This document shows, in pieces, positions 1 to 62,023 of a stretch of 64,000 nucleotides of DNA. The notes under the pieces were generated by a model. That model was not told the origin of the DNA. It searched no databases and saw only the letters and a list, made by a program, of their open reading frames with translations. Both the position numbers and the translations under genes were made by a program. The DNA lies in the NCBI RefSeq assembly GCF_964204865.1, contig NC_135250.1:22258001-22322000 (forward strand), written 5' to 3'. The stretch is from Styela clava (lineage: Eukaryota). The stretch's first letter is position 1. Each line of letters opens with the position of its first letter.

Positions 1-1019
1 GCTTTGAGGTCACAAAAATATGGTAACCCCAAGTTTACAGCAATCCTTTTGGTTTTGTTATAAGCAAACAAGTAGGTCTAAACTCTAAAGAATAAAGGCA
101 AAAGGTCAACTCTTCTTCCTCCGTCTCTGCCTGGTTTTACTATGAAATGCTGAAAAATTACTCATGTTCGCTAAATTCAATTCAGCAGATAAATAAACTG
201 CAGCTCGTGAAATTGCAGCAAGTACTTTTATCTCCATTAGAGGTAACATTGGAGGCAAACACTACGGGATGGAAAGTAAACGACATAGAGAGGTAAAAAA
301 TTGTGAAGTGGTGAATTTATTGATTCATATAGGCTACACAGCATTTAAATTAGGAAACAATAAAAAATTTATAATAAATGCAATATGTAAAATATTCAAT
401 CATATTTCAGGTATGTTTGACCGTAGTAGTATATATTTACGGTTTAACACAATTCTGTTAGTTTTCACGGCGCATTTGGCAACTCGTCACGGCGAACCCA
501 TTGGGAACCGCTACATTACACCGTTTTTCTTTATCAATTTCAGCTTTCCATTTTTTGGTGTTCCGTGAGGCGAGATAAAAAGTCTAAGTGTTCCGTGGCC
601 GAAAAAGTTTGGGAAACGCTGCTCTAACGTATACAAGATCGGATCGTGTATTCCCAACCAAGATCATGCTCTTGGACCGTGAGCCTCCGAGAGCTCATTT
701 TGCACAGGTTCGATACGTTTCTTTGGTCTATAATTATATCACTTGAGAAAATCTGTCTTCAATATTTATCTATTTGTAAGATACTATGAAAATTAGAAAA
801 ATGCCCGTTTTATTGGTGAACTTTATTGAAGTTCAAATTTTAACAGGACCCGCTACAGCGCATTTCATTACCCGTGACCTTTAACCCTTGTATCATTGTT
901 TCCGTCGTCTGCGTCAGTACGTTCTTACGTTGCCGGTACCGTTTTTCACTGCTGTTCGCCGACAAAAATTCGTATATCACCAACTTATAATCTGACAGTC
1001 TGACGGATAATTGCGGAGA

Positions 1020-4000
1020 ATGAGACGAGTAAATTTTGCTAAAGAACCACAGAATGAAAATTTCAACTCCAATGCCTTCTATGGGCAATCAAACAATCCC
1101 GATAGACCGTCATTCGCCGGCACTCTTCCATCGAAACAGAGAAAAATTTACGAAATGTGGCCAGGTGGTGATCCTAATAAGGTTCCTTTTACGATGAACA
1201 CAAAATCTCCCAGGAAAGGCATCAAGAAAGCACGTGAGTAAAGTGAAACATCTCCTGACCCTTCTGCCTAACTTCAACGCTACCGGTATCCTTCATTAGG
1301 ATAACGTTACTTACAGTCTAACAAGTTCAACTGTACAACGCGATAAATAGATAGATAGTTTATTTTGAAGTTATTCATAAATTTATGTACCGATAGCCCG
1401 TCATAATTCTTTAGTGTATTTACCAGTAGTTTTTGCGTAAACTTAGATATAAAGATCGAAATATTTCAGAATTTAGACTAGTATGATTTGTTATTTGTGT
1501 ATTTTATTCTAATAAAAATACTAATCTTCAAATTATTTTACTTTCATCGATTACAGCCGCAGTCAATCACTATGCTGAACCCCCAAAAAATGAATTACAA
1601 GACAACGTAAGTATGAATTGTTAGATATTTCCAAGTCTTAGTGTACGTTGAAGCTATTTTTCTATAATTTGGTTTTCGTATGGCGCATGATTGATTGACA
1701 CTGGTTGTACTTTGCCAATGAAAATACGAAATACTTACGAAAATTCTGTTTTTCGATTAGGCTATCAAACTCCACTAAGCAGAGATCAAAGTATCAAATT
1801 GCCTAACGACAGACACTATAATTTTTGGATGAAAAAATCCGGAAAGCAATGAATTTTTAGAAATTTTTGAACTGAAAATCATAAACTTGAAAAAAAAAGT
1901 GTTGAGAACATGAAAAAATACATTTTCGACTTGGCATCCTTTTATCAAAATTTCCGGTGAATATGGCCTCAAATTTAGATTAGAAACCAGCTCAAAATCA
2001 GCCTTTCTTTGTAATTTTTCAACATTCAATTTTTAGTATTGAAATCCTCAAAATATAGCTTTGAAGAATTTAATTAAAAAAAAAATGTTTATGATATTTA
2101 TGTACGATAGTATATATATATAGGCCTATATAATCCTTATTTTGAATTTCATTATTGCAGATGGGATCTTCGGGATCAATCTCTTTCCAACCTCCCAATC
2201 ACCCATCAAATGTTAATATGTATCCACACCCCGGTATGCGACACCCATGTCCCACTATCTTCAATCCAAGCTATTGGTGGCCACAGACACACGGTGAAAA
2301 CACAACGTTCCCTCCTCATTTTCAAATGCCTCCGGATACATACGGTAGGGATAATTTAATATCTGAGTGTAACATACGATTTCAATACCAAGATTGTTTT
2401 ATCAAATGATCTAGTCGCAGAAACTATAAATTTAAACTTAAAGTGTACGTACGGTATTTAAATATTTGATTTTAGAACAATCAATTAAAATAATCAGCAA
2501 TTTTTTTTGTTATTGGCTGCTTGTTGCTTTTTGGTAGTTAGCCAATTGCTAGCTATTTCAAAATATTTTTTATTTTTGCAAATTCTTATTGACTGCACTG
2601 CACTATCATTATATTTCACATTCATTCTCATGCAAACTTCATTTTTTGTACAACAGGTTACAGTGAGCCCCCGAATATGTTCCAGAATTATCCGCCGCCA
2701 CAACAATACGGAGCCAACCAATACTCCACAATATCACAAGCACCAATGTATGGGTACAATCAACCATCCCAGCCCCGACCATCCTGTATCAAGGTCAAAT
2801 ATAAAATATTTTTCATTTCCATTCAATATATTGAATATAACATCAGACGCGTACTATCGTATATCGTGCGCATTTTTATCGAGTAGGGCAGTGGTCGGCA
2901 AACTGTGGCCCGTTGGTGAAATGAGGCCCGCGAGAAAATTTCTCTCGTACGACCTGACCTCACTTTTAATGCATGAAACCAAAAAATTGTCATTGATTTA
3001 TTATTATCTGCGCACGGAAGGTATGTCGCAATCGTAACAATGTTTGTTTTGTAGTAATTATTAGCGTAATCAAAAGCACACGTCAGTTTTATGTCATTTA
3101 CTTTCCGAACGTGTCTACCGTTACTTGTAACTAACACACAAATAGGAGTTGCCCGTGCGTCATAGTTTGAAGTTTAATGTGCCAATTGTTTGTAGTCGGA
3201 AATTATTATGGCCCACACGCTACCGCATATTTAGCTGGGTGGTGACTAGTGAGTACATAAAGTTTGTCGACCACTAGACTAGAGGATATATCCTGCCTGC
3301 ATACCCTAGTAATAATACCAAATCCATGGTTTCAACAATTTTTAGGATGTAGGCCTACACTTTTATCATTTTCCATACAGAACAAGATTCAACCTATACC
3401 AAAACCTCAGTATCACGCGAGCCAGCAACAAAACCCGGAATTACAAGGAGGCGAGGCTCATATTAGTAACGAACGTCCAGGTACATCCGCGACCAAAAAG
3501 GTGTGCATTTGTGCAATTTGTGATTTTATTCTAATTTATCAATACTTGTACTTGTTTATTTTTACTCTGGGTTGTAAAAATTTCTGACGGAATAAAATTT
3601 TGATATATATAAAAAACTTTGGCTAACGCAACCCTTCTAAGAGTAAACTTTTAGTATATTTTGAGTTTGTATTTAAATTTTTCAATCATCATTAAAATTC
3701 TGAATTCTGATGCCGGCCCGATAGCCTATCTTCATTGAATTCAACATGTAATAATACAAAGGGGTTAAATAACAGTATATAGTGTCATGCCACATTCGCT
3801 ACAATACAATTAATGCTAGTCTGATTTATACTCGTCCGACGTGATCAAATGAATTTTTTAGGCTGACGCCACTCCGACGAAAGACAAAGCCGAAAAATAC
3901 AAACCAAAAAAGATATTTGTATCGACTAATGCTCGGGGTCTGCAAGCATGGTCCGAAGTTAAACAGGATACAATGGTCGTTTTTGAAATAATTGGTAAAT

Positions 4001-45236: not shown

Positions 45237-46878
45237 ATGCAAGCTACTTACTTACAACTATTTGCCATTCTATTGACTTGTGTTGGCGTGAATAGCCAAA
45301 CGGTACTGAGTGGTGATCCTAGCAGAATTCCACCTAATCCCCACAAAAAAGACAAGAATGATCCCCAAATGGCAGGGTCTATCAGTATGGGAACACCGGA
45401 TTTGAGCGACGAAGACTCCATGTCTATCCACATGCCCAATTACCTAAAGTGCGATGCTTGCAGAATTATTGCCTTCCGGTTCGCAGATACCCTCGAGGTA
45501 AGACTAAAAAATATTTGTCTTATCCAAACACATCAGATCGTTGTAGTCATGAAAAATGAACTGCAAGCTTTGCAACAAAAAACAACAAGACTGGTTTTGA
45601 CACCGCAGTTTTACAATTTCGTCTGAGCCGATTTATTACATTGTTTGTGTTGAAAGATTGACTGGTTTGCTTATCGCTTAAACTTTAACCTTTTATACAA
45701 AGATTACAAATGCAGGTTAAAACGGCTTAGGCGCGTGTGTTCATTCGAAAATGTTGGCGTGTTGTGGTTCGTCCGATGGTAACAATAACAAACCTAAACC
45801 CGTTATCTCATCCAGTATGAAACTAAATAGACTGGATGGGCAGAAATCGACGTGGTGTCAGATCGTTTTACCTCAAATTTGATTCCTTCAAAAAATACTA
45901 ATTCATGCTGTTTCATATATTTCTGAATATTGCCCATGCACGTGATAATCAAAACTTTTTTTTTTATCACAGAAAGAAATTGATAAATTTCCATCAATCA
46001 AGAAAGGCAAAAAAGAATTGTCTGAAGATAGAGTTTTAGATTTATTAGAAGGCGTTTGTGATGACAGCTGGGAACAGTACGGCATTAAAGAAGTGGAAGG
46101 AGTAAATAGATTATCCGGACCCGGTTTCGAAACTTCGGACATTCCGGGAATCATGCAAGGAGGCGGGAAATGGCCATTTAGGTATGAGTCAACATGACGA
46201 TTTATTAAGAAACGCACATCGCAGGCAAACTTATAAATTTCTTAATTACTCTAACGAAAATCAATAATATTTATCTAATTTAAACTTTTGTTTATGCATG
46301 ATTGCACCGAAATGTTCTTTCTAGTATATGTTTCAAATGTCTCCGGTACCATTACCCCTGCAGTTTTTGTTACGTGGCCAGATTTTGATCGACAGTCACG
46401 TCTTAATCACAAAACTTTAGAACAATATCATGATCATTGTAGATATTTAATATTGTCTTATCTGCGTCTTAAGTATATATTACACCGGCCGTTGAGTCTC
46501 AAGTGTTGGTGAAAGTATACCAATCCCAAAAGAGCTCTTCAAGTGCTCACGACGTCCTTGTCCAGACAAACAATTTTGCCACGAAGCTAATAATATAGGA
46601 TGCACTTATCAATTTTTAACATTTTTAAATGTTTCAGATTCAAACAAATGTGTCAAATCTTGGTCGGTGACGTTGGAGAGGAAATAGTTTACGAAACTTT
46701 TAGAAAAAGCAAAGGTAAAGGACTAGAAAAAAGACTTTGTTTTACCCCTATCGAAGGAAGGCCCGGCTTCTGTGAAAAGAAATCTGGAAAAGAGAAGAAA
46801 TTTAAAAATGCGGGAAAACCCAAGAAAACTAAAAATACTGAAACGGAGAAACCGAATTCACGTCACAATGAACTCTGA
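45237..46878 (+). CDS. MZB1: MZB1/pERp1 ortholog (CNPY/saposin-like ER chaperone), ~236 aa; exons 45237-45497, 45973-46181, 46638-46878
   Basis: Signal peptide; PDLSDEDSMSIHMPNYLKCDAC, ELSE..LDLLEGVC..WEQYGIKEVEGVNRLSGPG and GGKWPFR..MC..GDVGEE match recalled MZB1 motifs (PQLDDEEMYSAHMPAHLRCDAC, WQDYGVREVDQVKRLTGPG, GGPWPTRL). Six conserved Cys; C-terminal HNEL retention signal. Confidence 0.9.
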
Positions 46879-55912: not shown

Positions 55913-58900
55913 ATGGCGAAGTTCATGGTTGTATTACTATCTCTCACTTCAGTGGGTATGCTCGCCTCCTGTGACATACCGAATGTTTTCGAGTTTTGCA
56001 CTGCTCTCATGTCTGACAGTCAGAAATCTTGCAATACGGCGACATGTCAAGGAAGGCCAGGCAAGAGAGGCCCAGTTGGCCCTCGAGGAAACAAAGGTGT
56101 AAAAGGTAACACTGGCGCAACAGGGACATCGGAAGCACTTGAAGCAAGAGTAAGACAATTAGAAGGTAAAAGTCGTATTTATCTTGAAGTACTTTTGAAT
56201 TAAGAAAATTTTGGTAACTTTGTTTCTATGTAGCTGTGTTTAGTAAAAGAATTTACCAAATTTTTAATAATTATTGAAATAATACCAAACTGCATTTGTT
56301 AGACACCTATTAAAATTGTATTATCTGAATTGCCATGTGTAGAAGTGAGATACAAAACAAAATTGAACCGGTTTCTACACAAAAAAACAGAACAACCCAT
56401 TTTTGCTTATTTTTTCTGAATATTGTAAATAAACGTTATTAAAAATGATTTATTCGAATTAGTCTTTTTTATTGCAACTATATGCTCTGTTTAACAGATA
56501 CAATTATCATAATGAAGAAAGTATTCACACCGAATCAGAAACGTAAGAATTTATATATTTATTCTAGCTAATTTAAGGGTATAATATATTACCCAGTGAT
56601 TCCCAAAGTGGGCGATATCGCCCCCCAGTGGGCGAAAACGATACAGAGGGGGCGAAAAAGTCTTAGGGGGCGATAGGGGGGCGATTTTGCGAAACCTGTT
56701 TTATGTTCGGCGCACTTAATTCTGTACTCTGTGTGCATTCGCAGGCTTGAATCACGTGGGCGATTATCACACGCGAAAGGATTTCTGGTCTCGTCTTCGC
56801 AGTAAGGCAAGGTAGTTTGCGTATCTCAGTGGTCGGCAAAATACGGCCGGAATAAAATAATCTGGCCCGGGACGATTCACTGAATGAACCTTTCCCTGAC
56901 CTTTGACCGCGGAAAATTCTTCCCATACTTTACCATTTTAAAATTTTCGGTGCTTATTTTAAGAGTGGTTTCGCGAGTTGTTGCCTGTGAAATGGGGTAT
57001 TTGTTTCAAACTATCATTCTAATACACACCATTTAACAATCTGTTTTTTAAAAGTACCGATAAAGAATTTTAGCCTAGTCTATCACAGCTATTTCTACAC
57101 TAATTTTTGATTGCTGTATTTAAACTGAAACTCATAGTAAGACAAAGTATTCATTGACTTATTTGATTTATATTCAATTTCCGAAAAACAACTAAAAACT
57201 AACGAATATAATTCAAAAACGCGAAAATGAGGTAATGTTCACGACCACGCCTGAAAATCTGTCTGAGTGAGAGTGTCTGAGCGGATGCGAAAGGGGGCAT
57301 TGTTACGTATTTTGCATCTTGCTGATTGGCCAATGTCACGAAGTAAACAAGGAAGTCTATGCCCGGGGAAATATCCAAACGGCGGTTTTGACGATGAATT
57401 TTTTTTTATTCATAATCTACGCTCGAGGAGTAAATTACATTTTTTTACGTAACAGAATAAATCGCGAGACACGTTTATACCGAATTATACTATATCCTAA
57501 CAATTTAGTGAACAGCCACTCGTTTAACGAGCCTACAATTTAATTATAATTAGACAAATGGAAACACGCAGAAAAGTTGATGCTGAGTGCAGGGGTTCAA
57601 TAGCGCAGTAAATATTCGAATATATTGCAAAGCAATAAGGAAATAAAATTCATATTCTATTCGAGAGATTGATCACTGCATAATTTTTGTAAGAATGTAT
57701 CTTCTTAAAGAAAATATTTATCAAAATTTCACAAATCATGCTGAAATATTCACTTCGATGTTTGGAAGTACGTATTTGTGCAAACCATTATTTTCGAAAA
57801 TGAACATTACAAAGAACAAGCAAAGAAGTGGGTTTGGTGATGCCCATTTAGAAAATGTTTCAATCTTGGCGTCGTAAAGCTATCCAGCGTGATGCAGCAA
57901 CAAGACAGTGTCACATTAAATGTCATTGTAATATTTTTTTAATAAGACGACTGAGTTGAGTTCACGAATTGTCGCAGTTTTTGCGCGCTGTTCCGTTTTT
58001 AACTTTCGAAAAATATATGCGATCCGCAAAATACTAGCAACCCTGAATTTGTCCTGCGAGCGACATAAAATTTGCCGACCCCTGGGCCGTAGCCGATAGT
58101 CAGTCACGTCTTCTTCCACATCCGAGTCTATGAATCAAAAACAAATGGCTGGTTAATTATGAACTGGTGATCGGACTGAAGGCCGTGATAGGATGAGGAA
58201 TCGGGAATGAATTTTTCCGAAGTTTTTTGGTGCAGGTCATCAGGCTGTACGAATGAATGAGATGTACGAAAATCATTATTATAAGTTTGGGAAAATCAAC
58301 TTTGGTTTTATTATTTTAATGTGAAATGGGGTGGATTTAGGAAGTGAAATGCTATAAGACAAGAGTACACGGCGATTTTTGAGGAAGTGGAACCTTGGAT
58401 TTCCGACCTATTATATGGTAAAAAGGGGGGTTTTCAGCCCGGCTACTATTGCTATTAAAACAACGAAATCACCTTTCCATCAGTAAACGGGGTAATTTTA
58501 GATATAATAAAAAAAACTCGCTGAAGAACACCAAGCTCATTTATCTCATTAAAAAACACTATAAACTATAATTTGTCTTCTTATTTGGTCTGTAATATAT
58601 TCGTTTCTGACTTTATATTTTTTTGTAGTACAGGGGGGCGATGAAGTTGTATAAACTACTTTAGGGGGGCGATGGTCAAAAAAGTTTGGGAAGCACTGTA
58701 TTACACTACTTATAATATATTACACTATAACACTATATTATTAAAAACGACTATACTAAGTCGTGAGAAAAACGTGATAGACAAAGATGGCTGTCGGCAT
58801 TCACAAATTGGTTTAATGATAGGCATAAAAATCGATGTCAATATTTTGAAAGAATATCTTCTATAAATATGTTTTTGTGACGACCACTTACAAGTTCCAA

Positions 58901-61227
58901 AAACAACTCTAATGTGATAATCTGAATTTTCTTTCAAATTTCTAAAAAAAAAATTTATCAAAGCATTTCTTTTAAAATCCAAATTTTCGAGATGCAAAAT
59001 TTGTTGAGATGCAAAAATGTTTAAAATAAAAACTGAGATTGATCACATCAAATTACTGACAATCGGAGTATTAATACAAATTCCTAAATGGTCTAATAAT
59101 CGAGTAATACATCAAATGTTTCTCACAGTCGAATTTTGCGCAATGGGCATGAAGTCCAGAGACATTGCGGATGCAGATATTTCAACCTCTTCCGATTGGG
59201 AAAGTTTTCATCATGGACAATATGGAAGATTAGATGAACAGCCTGCATCAAACCCAACTTCCTATGGAGCATGGATTTCTCGAAAACGTGAGTTTTAAAG
59301 TTTCTGAGTGAAATGCGATTATTATCGTGTCTTGATATTGCCAGATTATGCACTTCGTGGGTATCGATGCAGCATTTTTATGACAGAAGAGAGCAATGCT
59401 CAAATATATGGGACACGAAAACCAAAACGAAGTAGCCTAGTACTGGTATTAAATCTTTTTGATACGACTCCGTCTGACCACCAGATGGCTACGATTTCTA
59501 ACGCGGAACCGCCACAAATGCAATTTTTAATTTTGATGAGGTCATCACACAAAATCCAAATTGACAAGCAAATCCGATAGAGCTCACAGAAATTTTGCAA
59601 ATAAATAAAAGTAACTGCCTTCATGCGATAACAACAGTCTCTAACCACTGCAATGTCAGTGCAATTAGTCTAGCTAGTAGTTGAAGAGAAAAGCGATTTT
59701 TTTCACGAAACGAATACTAAAAACAACAACAACATAACGAGAATATCGGTCAGAGACCGAAAACTTATCGATCGAAAGTTAGGGGATCCCCCAAAACAGA
59801 AACTGCGGTTTCGATTCGAAAAATTCTGCAAACCCGAACTGGATTGTTTTGATTAGTTTTCAGCCAATATCAGAAATGTAGGAAACAATACTACTCGAGG
59901 AAATACTTTTATGAAGAATTCTGCAAATCCGAACTGGATTGTTTCGATTAGTTTCCAGCCAATAGCCTATTTCTGTATTTACTAATCCTATAGTTTGTGT
60001 CAAATACAACGGCGCTAACCCAGGTTGCGACGGCTATTCAAACACAGCCTAGCGATATTTTGGTGAGGAATTCTGCAACCCCGAACCTGATTTAGGGATA
60101 TGGACATTGCTTAAACTTTAAGGAGTAATTATAAGTAACGAGATACGATCTCGCGGCGTGTATCCTTCGCTCTGACTCAATAGTGTGGAAAATTTCTCGA
60201 AGGAAACTTGCGCATCGCGACGACGTCAAAGTTACAAGAGAGATATGGACAAGGCTCAAAGATTAATCACGAGATACGATCTAGCGGTGTGTATCCTTCG
60301 CTCTGACTCACTAGCGTGAAAACTTGCGCATCTGATACGCACACACACATTCAGCGCGTCTCGAAAATCTCTCGATTTGTGAAAATCCAGATATCTTCAT
60401 CACTAATTAATTAATAACTCGCTAATTATACGACATAATTCATCCAAAATCAATAGGCTTCTGGTCCGAGATATGATGAATGCACATGCAAAATTTGGAG
60501 CAGATTCAACCACGCCTTCGTGAGATATCGCGTGCATCTAACAGACACACAGACAGACATACATACAGACATACAGACAAATACCTATCAATATACTTAC
60601 CGATCTTAAGATCGATAAGTAATAACAAAACGATATATAGGTCCATATTGTGTCCAATAATATAAAAATATTAAATAAAATATATACCAATATATTTTCG
60701 GGATGGTTTATAATACTTGAAATGTAAAAGAAAATCTCGCATCAATTTATACCAATTGTCAAATGATGTTTTTCTTTTTCGAACGCTAGATTGAAATTTT
60801 AGTTTTTCTTTGAACTCTTTTGTTTCAGCTCAAATCGGAGACTGGATTCAAATCGATTTAAAAATTCCTAAAGCAGTGTCTGGAGTTGTAACACAAGGTA
60901 GGCCTAGTTATGATCAATGGGTGACTTCGTATAAAATCAAGTGCGGAAATTCTACAAACAGTTTCCAAATCATCATGGAAAATAATCAAGAGAAGGTAGG
61001 CACATTTTGTTGTAGGTTCAATTTAAACATCTAATTCTGTATTTAAGATTGTATTTAATATACTTTACCAGGTATTTCCGGGAAATAATGACCGAAATAC
61101 TAAAGTCACAAATATATTTCCCAATCCAGTGGTTTGCCGCTACGTGCGACTCTATCCACAGCGTTGGCACGGACATTTGAGCATGAGAATGGAAATACTT
61201 CGTGGAGAATGCTACGATTTCTACTGA
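55913..61227 (+). CDS. secreted collagen - coiled-coil neck - F5/8 type C (discoidin) protein, ~259 aa; exons 55913-56165, 56498-56542, 59129-59287, 60829-60995, 61072-61227
   Basis: Signal peptide, Cys-containing N-segment, 9 Gly-X-Y triplets, heptad neck. FA58C motifs CAMGMKSRDIADADISTSS, GRL, GAW, WIQIDL, GVVTQGR, QWVTSYK, VFPGNND, RYVRLYP, MRMEI..C. Intron phases 1,1,1,0 are consistent. Confidence 0.85.
56594..58698. mobile_element. non-autonomous hAT element enclosing a second hAT derivative, in intron 2 of the discoidin gene
   Basis: TIR CAGTGATTCCCAAA / TTTGGGAAGCACTG; GGGGGCGAT subterminal motifs at both ends; near-TSD atattacc/tattacac. Confidence 0.7.
56827..58084 (+). mobile_element. 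internally deleted hAT (Charlie/GTF2IRD2-type) transposon with transposase remnants
   Basis: TIR CAGTGGTCGGCAAA / TTTGCCGACCCCTG; N-terminal METRRKVDAEC (57558) and C-terminal SMFGSTYLCKPLFSKMN..K.RS...D.HLEN (57750-57860). No TSD seen. Partial relative at 63105-63390. Confidence 0.8.
59736..60623 (-). mobile_element. Helentron-associated HINE/DINE-1-like element nested in a GGACAC-family element (59385-60660)
   Basis: Subterminal inverted repeats ACTTATCGATC (59763) and GATCGATAAGT (60610); short IR acttaccgatc (60595); hairpin tcggtc-aga-gaccga (59746); (CAGA/CATA)n at 60541-60578; internal repeats x3 and x2. Confidence 0.75.
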
Positions 61228-62023
61228 GAAATCATTCAAGATTTTGAGTTGAATTTGATATTCAAATTAAAAAAAGTGTAAATTTTCGTTGTTAGAATTT
61301 TGTTGTTTCAATACTCTATGGCCAACTTTTGATCTTATTTTGACTTGTTGTGATGTCATGGGTACTGCTAGATAACCACTAAACTAGACTGAAATGTCAT
61401 AAACTTTTAAACCGTGAAGGAAAAAACTTAAAAACACAGCACAATACGAGACAATCGCAGCGGACTTGGGAGAAATAGAGAACCATGCGGACAGGAAGAA
61501 GCCCAAGGCAATTATGACATCATAACACCAAATCTAGTTACGGTTGACAACCGACGAATCGATGAGATTCAATAAAAATGTCTCATAAAACGCTAATTCT
61601 TCTGATAATTCCTATTAGAAATAAGATGACACGCAAAGTTTCTTGATTATAGACGCTTGCCATGAATGTTAACCATTTAAACCAGGGGTCGACAATTACT
61701 TCTTAATCGCGAATAGGAAAGGGATTTCAAACTTTCGTGACCCAAACCTTCCGTTGGTTACTGGATGCAACAAAATTCACTGGTTTATGCTTCTTTAAAC
61801 TTCATAGAATAAACTATGATATAATTTATCATACAACCGATCTATTTGAATAAAACAACTTCACTTAACCGATCATAATTGCTTCCATCTCTTCAAACGG
61901 CTTTTTACAACTATTGACATTTGGTGCGTTTTGTTATACTGCACTGAGCAACAGAACCAATTGTCGTTTGCATCATATTATTTATTATACGTTTCCATCC
62001 ATGGAAAAATGCATTTTATTCAT

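What the first reader, a model, noticed from the sequence alone, without database searches (positions are those of the whole stretch)
55913..61227. Collectin/ficolin-like defence collagen with a discoidin (F5/8C) head and a MASP-docking-like motif
Seen: signal peptide; Cys-containing N-segment (C..FC..SC..TC); collagen GRP-GKR-GPV-GPR-GNK-GVK-GNT-GAT-GTS; neck LEARVRQLEDTIIIMKKVFTPNQK; then one complete F5/8C domain joined through a phase-1 intron. Known: MBL and other collectins have this Cys-collagen-neck body (ficolins lack the neck) with a C-type lectin or fibrinogen head. They recruit MASPs through Hyp-Gly-Lys-X-Gly-Pro, which reads PGKRGP here. The neck resembles the recalled SP-D neck ([24 protein letters not shown]). 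F5/8C domains bind galactose-type glycans, phosphatidylserine or collagen. Inference: an exon-shuffled further class of lectin-pathway recognition molecule or opsonin that automated annotation would likely label just 'lactadherin-like'. Caveats: X is Arg rather than the usual aliphatic residue, and I cannot check whether this architecture has been described.
Basis: partly seen in the sequence, partly recalled or inferred. Interest (0 to 1): 0.8.

Follow-up and report, generated by a model that had tools for sequence, protein, structure and literature searches.

The report
Collagen-stalked discoidin lectin gene, sea squirt
This is an intact, transcribed sea-squirt (Styela clava) gene for a small secreted protein with a discoidin head on a short collagen stalk, one of at least 55 such genes whose stalk exon and conserved lysine motif are shared with the animal's collectin-, ficolin- and pentraxin-headed genes, so it is probably an overlooked class of immune recognition molecule, though no function has been tested here.

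Summary
Five exons with canonical splice sites (55913-61227, + strand) add up to an in-frame 259-codon gene. It encodes a signal peptide, a 4-Cys segment, nine G-X-Y triplets, a coiled-coil neck and one complete F5/8C (discoidin) domain.

The genome is Styela clava. RNA-like contigs cover the exons, skip unique intron sequence, and join exons 3-4-5 exactly.

The scan has already found this family on other DNA of this genome (s1-817517, s1-817498, s1-825810, s1-815983, s1-810920). This window holds one more copy.

New here:
- At least 55 stalk-plus-discoidin genes exist in the genome.
- The stalk motif G-R-P-G-K-R-G occurs 84 times, against 2 for a control pattern.
- The motif heads discoidin (35), C-type lectin (7), fibrinogen (6) and pentraxin (2) genes.
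- All four classes end the stalk exon at the same phase-1 donor.
- The genome holds a MASP-type gene (CUB-EGF-CUB-CCP-CCP-protease).

So "exon-shuffled defence collagen" is well supported. MASP docking is plausible but untested: the X residue is Arg, the motif sits at the very start of a short stalk, and some relatives lack the Lys.

A 2019 paper on an agglutinating S. clava "lactadherin" could not be read, which limits any novelty claim.

The parts
55913..55969 (+). Start codon and signal peptide (residues 1-19, MAKFMVVLLSLTSVGMLAS)
   Evidence: Translation. The hydrophobic core is read directly. AF2 of paralog P0151 gives helix 2-18. The cleavage site was not predicted with a tool.
55970..56050 (+). 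Cys-rich N-terminal segment (C20, C29, C40, C45) with the family motif IPNV(F/Y)EFC
   Evidence: It is among the most conserved parts of the family. A role in inter-chain disulfides is inferred.
56051..56131 (+). Collagen-like stalk, nine G-X-Y triplets (residues 47-73)
   Evidence: Pfam Collagen 22.9 bits, E 7e-5, below the curated cut-off. The Gly positions are invariant in the family alignment.
56057..56074 (+). P-G-K-R-G-P motif, with Lys51 in the X position of triplet 2
   Evidence: The coding pattern for G-R/S-P-G-K-R-G occurs 84 times in the genome against 2 for the reversed control. It is kept through synonymous codon changes and lies upstream of four head classes.
56132..56165 (+). 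First part of the neck (EALEARVRQLE plus 1 base), ending at the phase-1 donor G|GTAAAA
   Evidence: The same donor position and phase occur in the discoidin, CTLD-like, FReD and pentraxin classes.
56498..56542 (+). Exon 2: second part of the neck ((D)TIIIMKKVFTPNQK), phase 1 to phase 1
   Evidence: RNA-like runs X1 and X3 have depth in the bin holding this exon but none in the unique intron-1 bin 56174-56360. AF2 helix 73-97 in the paralog.
59129..59287 (+). Exon 3: start of the discoidin domain, with the first Cys (LEFC) and variable loops 1-2
   Evidence: Contigs X3 record 20 and X6 record 28 begin exactly at 59129. It aligns to the domain start in the paralogs.
60829..60995 (+). Exon 4: discoidin core (GDWIQIDL..VTQGRP..WVTSYK)
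   Evidence: Pfam F5_F8_type_C 38.5 bits. It is joined to exons 3 and 5 in contig X6 record 28.
61072..61227 (+). Exon 5: end of the discoidin domain, last Cys (RGEC) and TGA stop
   Evidence: Pfam F5_F8_type_C 37.3 bits.. Spliced contig.
56543..59128 (+). Intron 2 (2.6 kb), mostly high-copy repeat
   Evidence: Summed depth is 10^5-10^6 in DNA-like run X10 over 56548-58791, against about 500-4000 on the exons and unique intron parts.
59288..60828 (+). Intron 3 (1.5 kb), with high-copy repeats
   Evidence: Depth profile, bins 59353-60661.

Best explanation
The locus is an intact, transcribed five-exon gene of the ascidian Styela clava. It encodes a secreted protein of about 259 residues, built like a collectin or ficolin but with a different head.

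Shown:
- The domain order is signal peptide, 4-Cys N-terminal segment, nine collagen triplets, a neck helix of about 25 residues, and one discoidin (F5/8 type C) domain.
- It belongs to a family of at least 55 genes.
- Its stalk exon is the same module, with the same G-R-P-G-K-R-G start and the same phase-1 donor, that this genome also places before C-type lectin, fibrinogen-like and pentraxin heads.

Inferred:
- Three chains zip through the neck and collagen into a trimer.
- The N-terminal cysteines link trimers into larger bouquets.
- The clustered discoidin heads, whose ligand-binding loops are the most variable part of the family, bind repeated targets (glycan, lipid or protein) on microbes or altered self. 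The molecule would then act as a soluble agglutinin or opsonin.

More speculative (about 0.3): the conserved stalk lysine docks a Ca2+-binding CUB domain of a MASP-type protease, which would tie recognition to complement C3.
For: - Gene model.
- Species and annotation.
- Full-length paralog models with Collagen plus F5_F8_type_C: (74-94 bits).
- Junction residues match the closest paralog.
- Transcription and splicing: runs X1, X3 and X6 cover the exons but not the unique intron bins; X6 record 28 joins 59129-59287, 60829-60993 and 61070-61228; X1 record 1 and X3 record 20 match this copy with 1 mismatch each.
- Family size: 55 of 58 stalk-exon matches with E < 1e-6 have a discoidin last exon 1.5-9 kb downstream on the same strand.
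- Shared stalk module: Fibrinogen_C 1e-28, Pentaxin 3.6e-29 and Collagen plus Lectin_C 1.5e-14 lie downstream of stalk-like exons. Stalk starts are aligned. The motif census is 84 against 2. Heads assigned: 35 discoidin, 7 Lectin_C, 6 Fibrinogen_C, 2 Pentaxin. Common phase-1 donor.
- Fold: AF2 of paralog P0151 gives a neck helix at 73-97 and a discoidin sandwich. Its nearest solved structures are factor VIII C2, lactadherin C2 and neuropilin b1, with target-normalised TM about 0.85.
- Variability peaks in the loop regions, residues 120-150, 177-180 and 241, with indels.
- Partner class present: a CUB-EGF-CUB-CCP-CCP-protease gene at C8:17.361-17.370 Mb. Its best named PDB matches are MASP-1 and MASP-3 for CUB1 (1.6e-20; cubilin scored higher) and MASP-2 for the protease exon (9e-15).
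- Literature: the motif definition, and the finding that a single Lys in the X position drives MASP binding (PMC2856262). MBLs, ficolins and MASPs are described in ascidians (PMC5465252). MBL and ficolin genes are expanded in S. clava, with no mention of a discoidin class (PMC7540406).
Against: - No binding, oligomerisation or expression-condition data exist for this gene.
- The collagen stretch is short (27 residues) and scores below Pfam's cut-off.
- The Lys motif sits at the very start of the stalk, next to the presumed disulfide hub, unlike MBL, where it lies well inside the stalk.
- X is Arg rather than an aliphatic residue.
- Some relatives lack the Lys: P0162 has GETGEMGP, P0163 has GRTGRKGS, and Clavelina P0164 has PGRRGP.
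- Homology of the stalk exon between head classes rests on 30-40% identity over about 65 residues (E 1e-2 to 1e-4), plus the motif and the donor phase.
- The spliced contig across exons 3-5 has 14 mismatches in exon 4, so it may come from a paralog or another allele.
- The structure model is of a paralog, not of this copy.
- The head's nearest solved relatives bind phospholipid or peptides, not sugars.
Confidence: 0.6

Rival explanations
1. The protein is a matrix, adhesion or clearance protein rather than a microbe-recognition molecule. A trimeric discoidin protein could bridge phosphatidylserine, collagen or tunic polysaccharide to cells, as lactadherin, retinoschisin or discoidin-domain receptors do. 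One possible setting is tissue resorption at metamorphosis.
For: - The head's closest solved relatives are the membrane-binding C2 domains of factor VIII and lactadherin, neuropilin b1 and the DDR2 discoidin domain.
- Complement-type genes of S. clava are reported as highly expressed at metamorphosis (PMC7540406).
- A 'milk fat globule membrane' marker is cited in endostyle thyroid-like cells (PMC10980280).
Against: - An expansion to at least 55 tandem copies with hypervariable binding loops is typical of immune recognition families, not of structural proteins.
- The stalk module is shared with collectin-, ficolin- and pentraxin-type genes.
- Positions aligned to the hydrophobic factor VIII spike residues are largely polar in the paralog, and by direct reading in the window (SFHH, PSYD).
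- A published title calls an S. clava 'lactadherin' an agglutinating glycoprotein (cited in PMC10980280).
Confidence: 0.2
2. The protein is a recognition molecule as described, but the conserved G-R-P-G-K-R-G does something other than dock a MASP. Candidates are a cell receptor or other partner, a dibasic (K-R) processing site that removes the Cys-rich segment, glycosaminoglycan binding, or a structural need at the junction between the disulfide hub and the triple helix.
For: - The motif is always at the first triplets of the stalk.
- Arg after the Lys is almost as conserved as the Lys itself in the 84 sites, which the MASP motif does not require (PMC2856262 gives X as generally aliphatic).
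- Pentraxin-headed copies carry it too.
Against: - In relatives the residue after Lys varies (Thr, Met, Ala, Ser, Lys) while the Lys stays, which argues against a strict K-R cleavage site.
- The Lys is in the X position and flanked by Pro in Y and Gly-Pro, the register of the MASP and C1r/C1s site.
- A MASP-type gene with the acidic FDLE..C.YD signature in CUB1 exists.
Confidence: 0.35
3. The model is an artefact: two separate genes (a small collagen peptide gene and a discoidin gene), or a decaying copy in a tandem family.
For: - The copy is unusually long (5.3 kb against about 2 kb for paralogs).
- The 56542/59129 joint was not shown directly.
- Neighbouring copies at 9.5 and 25 kb beyond the window end have a stop in the stalk exon.
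Against: - All five exons are open, with canonical splice sites and compatible phases, and they sum to a multiple of three.
- The extra length is high-copy repeat inside introns.
- Contigs break exactly at the predicted donor and acceptor and match this copy with 1 mismatch.
- Paralog models have the same junction residues.
Confidence: 0.04

Closest known systems
Collectins (mannose-binding lectin, SP-A, SP-D, CL-K1)
   Same: The order of parts is the same: signal peptide, Cys-containing N-terminal segment, collagen triplets, alpha-helical neck, one globular recognition head. Both have a Lys in the X position within Pro-Gly-Lys-X-Gly-Pro. In this genome, stalk exons with the same start and the same donor phase precede true C-type lectin heads.
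   Different: The head is a discoidin domain, not a C-type lectin domain. The stalk is much shorter (9 triplets). The motif sits at the first triplets and X is Arg. There is no significant sequence similarity to any solved collectin chain.
Ficolins
   Same: Both have a collagen stalk with the Lys motif carrying a non-C-type-lectin head, and both are expanded in S. clava (54 genes reported, PMC7540406). Six G-R/S-P-G-K-R-G stalks in this genome carry fibrinogen-like heads.
   Different: The head is a discoidin domain rather than a fibrinogen-like domain. A distinct neck helix is present.
Lactadherin (MFG-E8), the name given by automated annotation
   Same: The head is a discoidin domain close to the lactadherin C2 domain in sequence and fold (E 1e-24 to 1e-22; target-normalised TM 0.84).
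   Different: There are no EGF domains, only one discoidin domain instead of two, and a collagen stalk and neck that lactadherin lacks. The name describes the head only.
Retinoschisin
   Same: Both are small secreted proteins with a Cys-rich N-terminal oligomerisation segment and a single discoidin domain (PDB match E 6e-21).
   Different: Oligomerisation here would go through collagen and a coiled coil (trimers), not the RS1 domain's disulfide-linked octamer rings.
S. clava 'lactadherin', an agglutinating glycoprotein (Guo, Dou and Dong 2019, PubMed 31140104; known here only by its title, cited in PMC10980280)
   Same: Same species and same annotation name. If it is a member of this family, agglutination has already been shown for one paralog.
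   Different: Unknown. The paper is not in the held library, so neither the gene nor its architecture could be checked.

Membership tests
F5/8 type C (discoidin) domain, PF00754 | Match to the family profile over the whole domain | tested here: met
   Exons 4 and 5 score 38.5 and 37.3 bits against a cut-off of 28.2, covering profile positions 35-127. Exon 3 supplies the N-terminal part by alignment to paralogs that match positions 2-127.
F5/8 type C (discoidin) domain, PF00754 | Cys at the start and end of the domain (disulfide closing the barrel) | tested here: met
   LEFC at the start of exon 3 and RGEC near the end of exon 5. Both columns are conserved in the family. The bond itself is inferred.
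Collectins | Collagen-like G-X-Y region | tested here: met
   Nine uninterrupted triplets, residues 47-73. Pfam Collagen 22.9 bits, below the cut-off only because the stretch is short.
Collectins | Alpha-helical coiled-coil neck between stalk and head | tested here: inconclusive
   AF2 of the 82%-identical paralog P0151 gives helix 73-97. Hydrophobic residues recur every 3-4 positions in EALEARVRQLEDTIIIMKKVF. Trimer formation was not modelled.
Collectins | C-type lectin carbohydrate-recognition domain as the head | tested here: not met
   The head is F5_F8_type_C, and no exon gives a Lectin_C hit. The gene is therefore not a collectin.
Ficolins | Fibrinogen-like domain as the head | tested here: not met
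   No Fibrinogen_C hit. The fibrinogen-headed relatives are separate genes.
Lectin-pathway recognition molecules (functional class) | [quoted passage not shown] | tested here: inconclusive
   P49-G-K-R-G-P54 is in the correct register and is conserved across 84 stalks. However, Xaa is Arg, and hydroxylation and binding are unknown.
Lectin-pathway recognition molecules (functional class) | Physical association with a MASP and activation of C3 or C4 | not testable with these tools
   Only the presence of a MASP-type gene in the genome was shown.
Lectin-pathway recognition molecules (functional class) | Oligomers of trimers that bind microbial or altered-self surfaces | not testable with these tools
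   Four N-terminal Cys and hypervariable head loops are consistent with this, but there is no direct evidence.
Lactadherin / MFG-E8 | EGF-like domains followed by two tandem discoidin domains | tested here: not met
   No EGF hit and a single discoidin domain.

The most novel reading that the evidence does not exclude
Tunicates use one shuffled 'stalk exon', with a conserved lysine docking site, in front of at least four kinds of recognition head. The discoidin-headed genes (at least 55 in S. clava, as many as the ficolins) and the pentraxin-headed genes would then be true MASP-binding, complement-activating recognition molecules. That would make them new classes of the lectin pathway, missed by every complement inventory because annotation names them after the head.
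Probability: 0.25. Interest if true: 0.8.

Novelty: new variant of a known kind. Interest (0 to 1): 0.58.

Why it matters
Collectins, ficolins and C1q are the textbook collagen-stalked recognition molecules of complement. The sea-squirt lectin pathway is used to infer how the vertebrate system arose.

A discoidin-headed class as large as the ficolin family would change the count of candidate recognition molecules in tunicates. This class is built on the same stalk exon and keeps the same lysine as the animal's collectin- and ficolin-type genes. The published S. clava inventory lists only 25 MBL and 54 ficolin genes (PMC7540406).

It would also give a clean natural experiment in exon shuffling: one stalk with four heads.

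The docking idea is directly testable with one recombinant stalk, one MASP fragment and a Lys-to-Ala mutant.

For this particular window the news is modest. It is one more intact copy of a family that the scan has already met, and that a 2019 paper may already have touched.

Tried and rejected
Left out by rule
- The joined (spliced) protein of this window was never assembled, searched or folded. All searches used single exons or database proteins of paralogs. The structure and the PDB comparisons therefore describe paralog P0151 (82% identical in exon 1), not this copy.

Searches with little or no result
- The exhaustive representative search with exon 1 was swamped by generic collagens. Only about a dozen true relatives emerged, nearly all from S. 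clava.
- The word-based search with P0151 did not return the window's own product, so I could not tell whether NCBI annotates this copy.
- The amphioxus hit P0167 has a discoidin domain but no stalk.
- The stalk exon against the PDB gave only generic collagen matches, so there is no support for homology of the neck with SP-D.
- C1q heads: none lies downstream of a G-R-P-G-K-R-G site.
- A terminal inverted repeat that I thought I saw by eye in intron 2 was not recovered by the repeat finder. I report only high-copy repeat.
- P0107, which has the same stalk and an unknown head, has no Pfam match above cut-off and no significant PDB match for its head.

Blocked or exhausted tools
- Read laying listed only the best-supported joints, so the 56165/56498 and 56542/59129 joints were not displayed.
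As a result, 34 of 84 sites have no assigned head; 10 of those are CTLD-like by eye in loci fetched earlier.
- Guo et al. 2019 is not held.

Other

Full report
OBSERVATION

The sequence at 55913-61227 (+ strand) reads as the first-stage reader described. I translated each exon on its own.

- Exon 1 (55913-56165) gives MAKFMVVLLSLTSVGMLAS, then a segment with Cys20, Cys29, Cys40 and Cys45. Nine uninterrupted triplets follow, GRP-GKR-GPV-GPR-GNK-GVK-GNT-GAT-GTS (residues 47-73), and then EALEARVRQLE.
- Exon 2 (56498-56542) gives TIIIMKKVFTPNQK.
- Exons 3-5 (59129-59287, 60829-60995, 61072-61227) give a discoidin domain that runs from LEFC to RGEC and ends at a TGA.

Every intron is GT..AG, and the phases are 1, 1, 1, 0. 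The exon lengths sum to 780 nt, which is 259 codons plus the stop.

Pfam calls F5_F8_type_C above its cut-off on exons 4 and 5 (38.5 and 37.3 bits). It calls Collagen below cut-off on exon 1 (22.9 against 27.2 bits), as expected for 27 residues. The window holds no second copy.

Everything below that needs a full-length protein uses database proteins of paralogs.

ORGANISM, ANNOTATION AND TRANSCRIPTION

An exhaustive profile search with exon 1 and an exact look-up of its best hits place the family in Styela clava. Full-length paralogs of 255-274 residues carry Collagen plus F5_F8_type_C at 74-94 bits.

The closest paralog, P0151 (XP_039262429.1, on contig C13), reads ..VKELEDTVASMKKVFTSKLEFCSMGMKSRE... 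The window's split codons give the same residues at the same places: G|AT gives Asp after RQLE, and C|TC gives Leu before EFC. This supports both neck junctions.

Thirteen public runs hold parts of the stretch. I laid four of them on it.
- Three behave as RNA (X1, X3, X6, from three studies). They have depth over the exons but none over the unique intron bins 56174-56360 and 58792-58978.
- X10 behaves as DNA and covers everything.
- Contig X6 record 28 joins 59129-59287, 60829-60993 and 61070-61228, which are the predicted exon 3-4-5 borders. It has 14 mismatches in exon 4, so it may come from an allele or a paralog.
- X3 record 20 starts exactly at 59129 with one mismatch and has 102 further bases upstream that do not lie on the intron.
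- X1 record 1 matches exon 1 with one mismatch, stops at 56163 and has 75 further bases.

These break points and lengths fit the model. The output did not list the 56542/59129 joint itself, so that junction is supported but not displayed.

THE FAMILY

Searching the window's own assembly (377 Mb) with exon 1 gave 149 matches. Searching with the last discoidin exon gave 106. Of the 58 stalk-exon matches with E < 1e-6, 55 have a discoidin last exon 1.5-9 kb downstream on the same strand. They lie in tandem arrays on at least ten contigs.

Five further copies lie within 112 kb downstream of this one on contig C1. Two of them have a stop in the stalk exon.

This copy spans 5.3 kb where most span about 2 kb. 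The excess is high-copy repeat inside introns 2 and 3 (depth profile).

The scan has reported this family before on other DNA of the same genome. I checked its species assignment and the family claim independently.

THE SAME STALK CARRIES OTHER HEADS

The weaker stalk-exon matches have no discoidin exon behind them. I fetched twelve of these loci and read their open frames. Pfam finds:
- Fibrinogen_C (1e-28) behind the C19 arrays;
- Pentaxin (3.6e-29) at C18:9.44 Mb;
- Collagen plus Lectin_C (1.5e-14) at C13:10.84 Mb;
- Lectin_C (2e-9) at C16:6.45 Mb.

Several other loci have C-type-lectin-like exons by eye; one has a weak hit at E 0.0028.

When the stalk starts are aligned, almost all begin G-R-P-G-K-R-G. 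This holds for the discoidin copies, the C-type lectin copies and the pentraxin copy. The C19 ficolin-like arrays have G-R-V-G-K-(T/A)-G-P.

A DNA pattern for G-(R/S)-P-G-K-R-G occurs 84 times in the genome, against 2 for the reversed control. Synonymous variants appear at every degenerate position, including AGR/CGN arginine switches, so it is the peptide that is conserved and not merely the DNA.

I crossed these 84 sites with the coordinates of head-domain matches and tallied the result.

| Head within 7 kb downstream, same strand | Sites |
|---|---|
| Discoidin | 35 |
| Lectin_C | 7 |
| Fibrinogen_C | 6 |
| Pentaxin | 2 |
| C1q | 0 |
| None found in the capped lists | 34 |

Ten of the 34 unassigned sites are the C-type-lectin-like arrays inspected by eye in loci fetched earlier.

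In all four classes the stalk exon ends at the same place, one base into a codon, at an N|GTA donor. These are predicted donors. Only the window's own donor has read support.

This is good evidence that one stalk module has been combined with different heads.

THE HEAD

AlphaFold2 on paralog P0151, with a 15-sequence family alignment, gives mean pLDDT 74, a neck helix at residues 73-97 and a confident beta-sandwich at 100-255. By sequence and by fold, the nearest solved structures are factor VIII C2, lactadherin C2, neuropilin b1, retinoschisin and DDR2, with target-normalised TM about 0.85. None of them matches the N-terminal part.

Among ten S. clava members, variability and indels concentrate at residues 120-150, 177-180 and around 241. 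I take these to be the loops that form the ligand-binding end of discoidin domains. The core strands, the IPNV(F/Y)EFC segment and the stalk start are the most conserved parts.

The positions aligned to the hydrophobic membrane-binding spike residues of factor VIII are mostly polar. The paralog has ESFH and K.VK where factor VIII has NMFA and SL.L, and the window reads ESFHH and PSYD at these positions. The ligand cannot be named from sequence.

THE DOCKING MOTIF

[quoted passage not shown] Here P49-G-K-R-G-P54 is in that register. It is conserved over 84 stalks, including the head classes that are the accepted MASP partners elsewhere.

The genome holds a gene with the MASP domain order CUB-EGF-CUB-CCP-CCP-protease at C8:17.361-17.370 Mb. 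The best named PDB matches of its CUB1 exon are MASP-1 and MASP-3 (1.6e-20), behind cubilin. Those of its last protease exon are MASP-2 and MASP-3 (9e-15). Ascidian MBLs, ficolins and MASPs are described in the literature (PMC5465252).

Against docking:
- X is Arg.
- The motif occupies the first triplets of a stalk only nine triplets long, next to the presumed disulfide hub.
- Some relatives have Glu or Arg at the Lys position: P0162, P0163 and Clavelina P0164.
- Nothing has been measured.

I put docking to a MASP-type CUB domain at about 0.3. That the motif serves some conserved partner or processing function is much more likely.

OUTSIDE STYELA

The ascidian Clavelina lepadiformis has two proteins with the same layout: P0165 with PGKRGP and P0164 with PGRRGP. 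Three proteins from unnamed transcriptome or metagenome assemblies (P0168, P0170, P0174) have it too.

The amphioxus hit has only the head.

LITERATURE AND NOVELTY

I found no paper in the held library that describes a collagen-stalked discoidin protein as a class.

The S. clava genome paper counts 25 MBL and 54 ficolin genes and does not mention this family.

[quoted passage not shown] It is cited in PMC10980280 but is not held. If its protein is a family member, agglutination is already shown.

VERDICT

The architecture, the mislabelling and the exon shuffling hold; the lectin-pathway function is untested.
- As a kind, this is a new variant of the defence-collagen theme. As a locus, it is one more copy of a family this scan had already met.

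Noticed in passing
window 50539-53945 (+): A gene for a CUB domain followed by a trypsin-like serine protease lies 2 kb upstream on the same strand. Pfam gives CUB 35.8 bits and Trypsin on two exons; the last exon reads GDSGGP. The CUB exon's best PDB matches are cubilin, then MASP-1 and MASP-2 CUB domains. It is not a MASP, because it has no EGF or CCP exons. No other family array has such a neighbour in the CUB match list, so the adjacency is probably chance.
   Followed up: partly
G000:C8:17361000-17370300 (L043:2152-9864 and L044:2-1243, +): A MASP/C1r/C1s-type gene with exons in the order CUB1, EGF, CUB2, CCP1, CCP2, serine protease. CUB1 reads FTEFDLEDSY..CVYDF. The best named PDB hits are MASP-1 and MASP-3 for CUB1 and MASP-2 for the protease.
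   Followed up: partly
L036:371-1891 (G000:C18:9435670-9437190, +) and G000:C2:19964290-19965466 (-): These genes pair a G-R-P-G-K-R-G collagen stalk with a pentraxin head (Pfam Pentaxin 3.6e-29 at C18; 71 bits at C2). I did not find this collagen-pentraxin chimera described in the literature I could search.
   Followed up: partly
G000:C1:22331461-22331711 and 22346871-22347121 (9.5 and 25 kb beyond the window end): Two neighbouring copies have the stalk exon split into two matches with a TGA between them. They are frameshifted or decaying copies, or carry an extra intron.
   Followed up: no
window 56548-58791 and 59353-60661: Introns 2 and 3 are filled with very high-copy repeats, with summed contig depth of 10^5-10^6 in the DNA-like run. 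This explains why this copy spans 5.3 kb against about 2 kb for most paralogs.
   Followed up: partly
protein P0052 (XP_039265410, S. clava, contig C18): A family member carries an extra C-terminal ILEI/FAM3 domain (Pfam 56.5 bits) after the discoidin head.
   Followed up: no
protein P0107 (328 aa, unnamed Logan assembly): It has the same kind of stalk (GLPGKRGPLGPKG) and a long coiled coil. Its Cys-rich C-terminal head has no Pfam match above cut-off and no significant PDB match.
   Followed up: partly
window 45237-46878 (+): A small multi-exon gene encodes a secreted protein that ends in HNEL (an ER-retention type signal). The two exons scanned gave no Pfam hit.
   Followed up: no
protein P0001 against P0151 (XP_039262429.2 against .1): NCBI's newer model of the closest paralog is cut to 108 residues, stops just inside the discoidin domain, and is renamed 'uncharacterized'. 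The older model is the full 258 residues.
   Followed up: no
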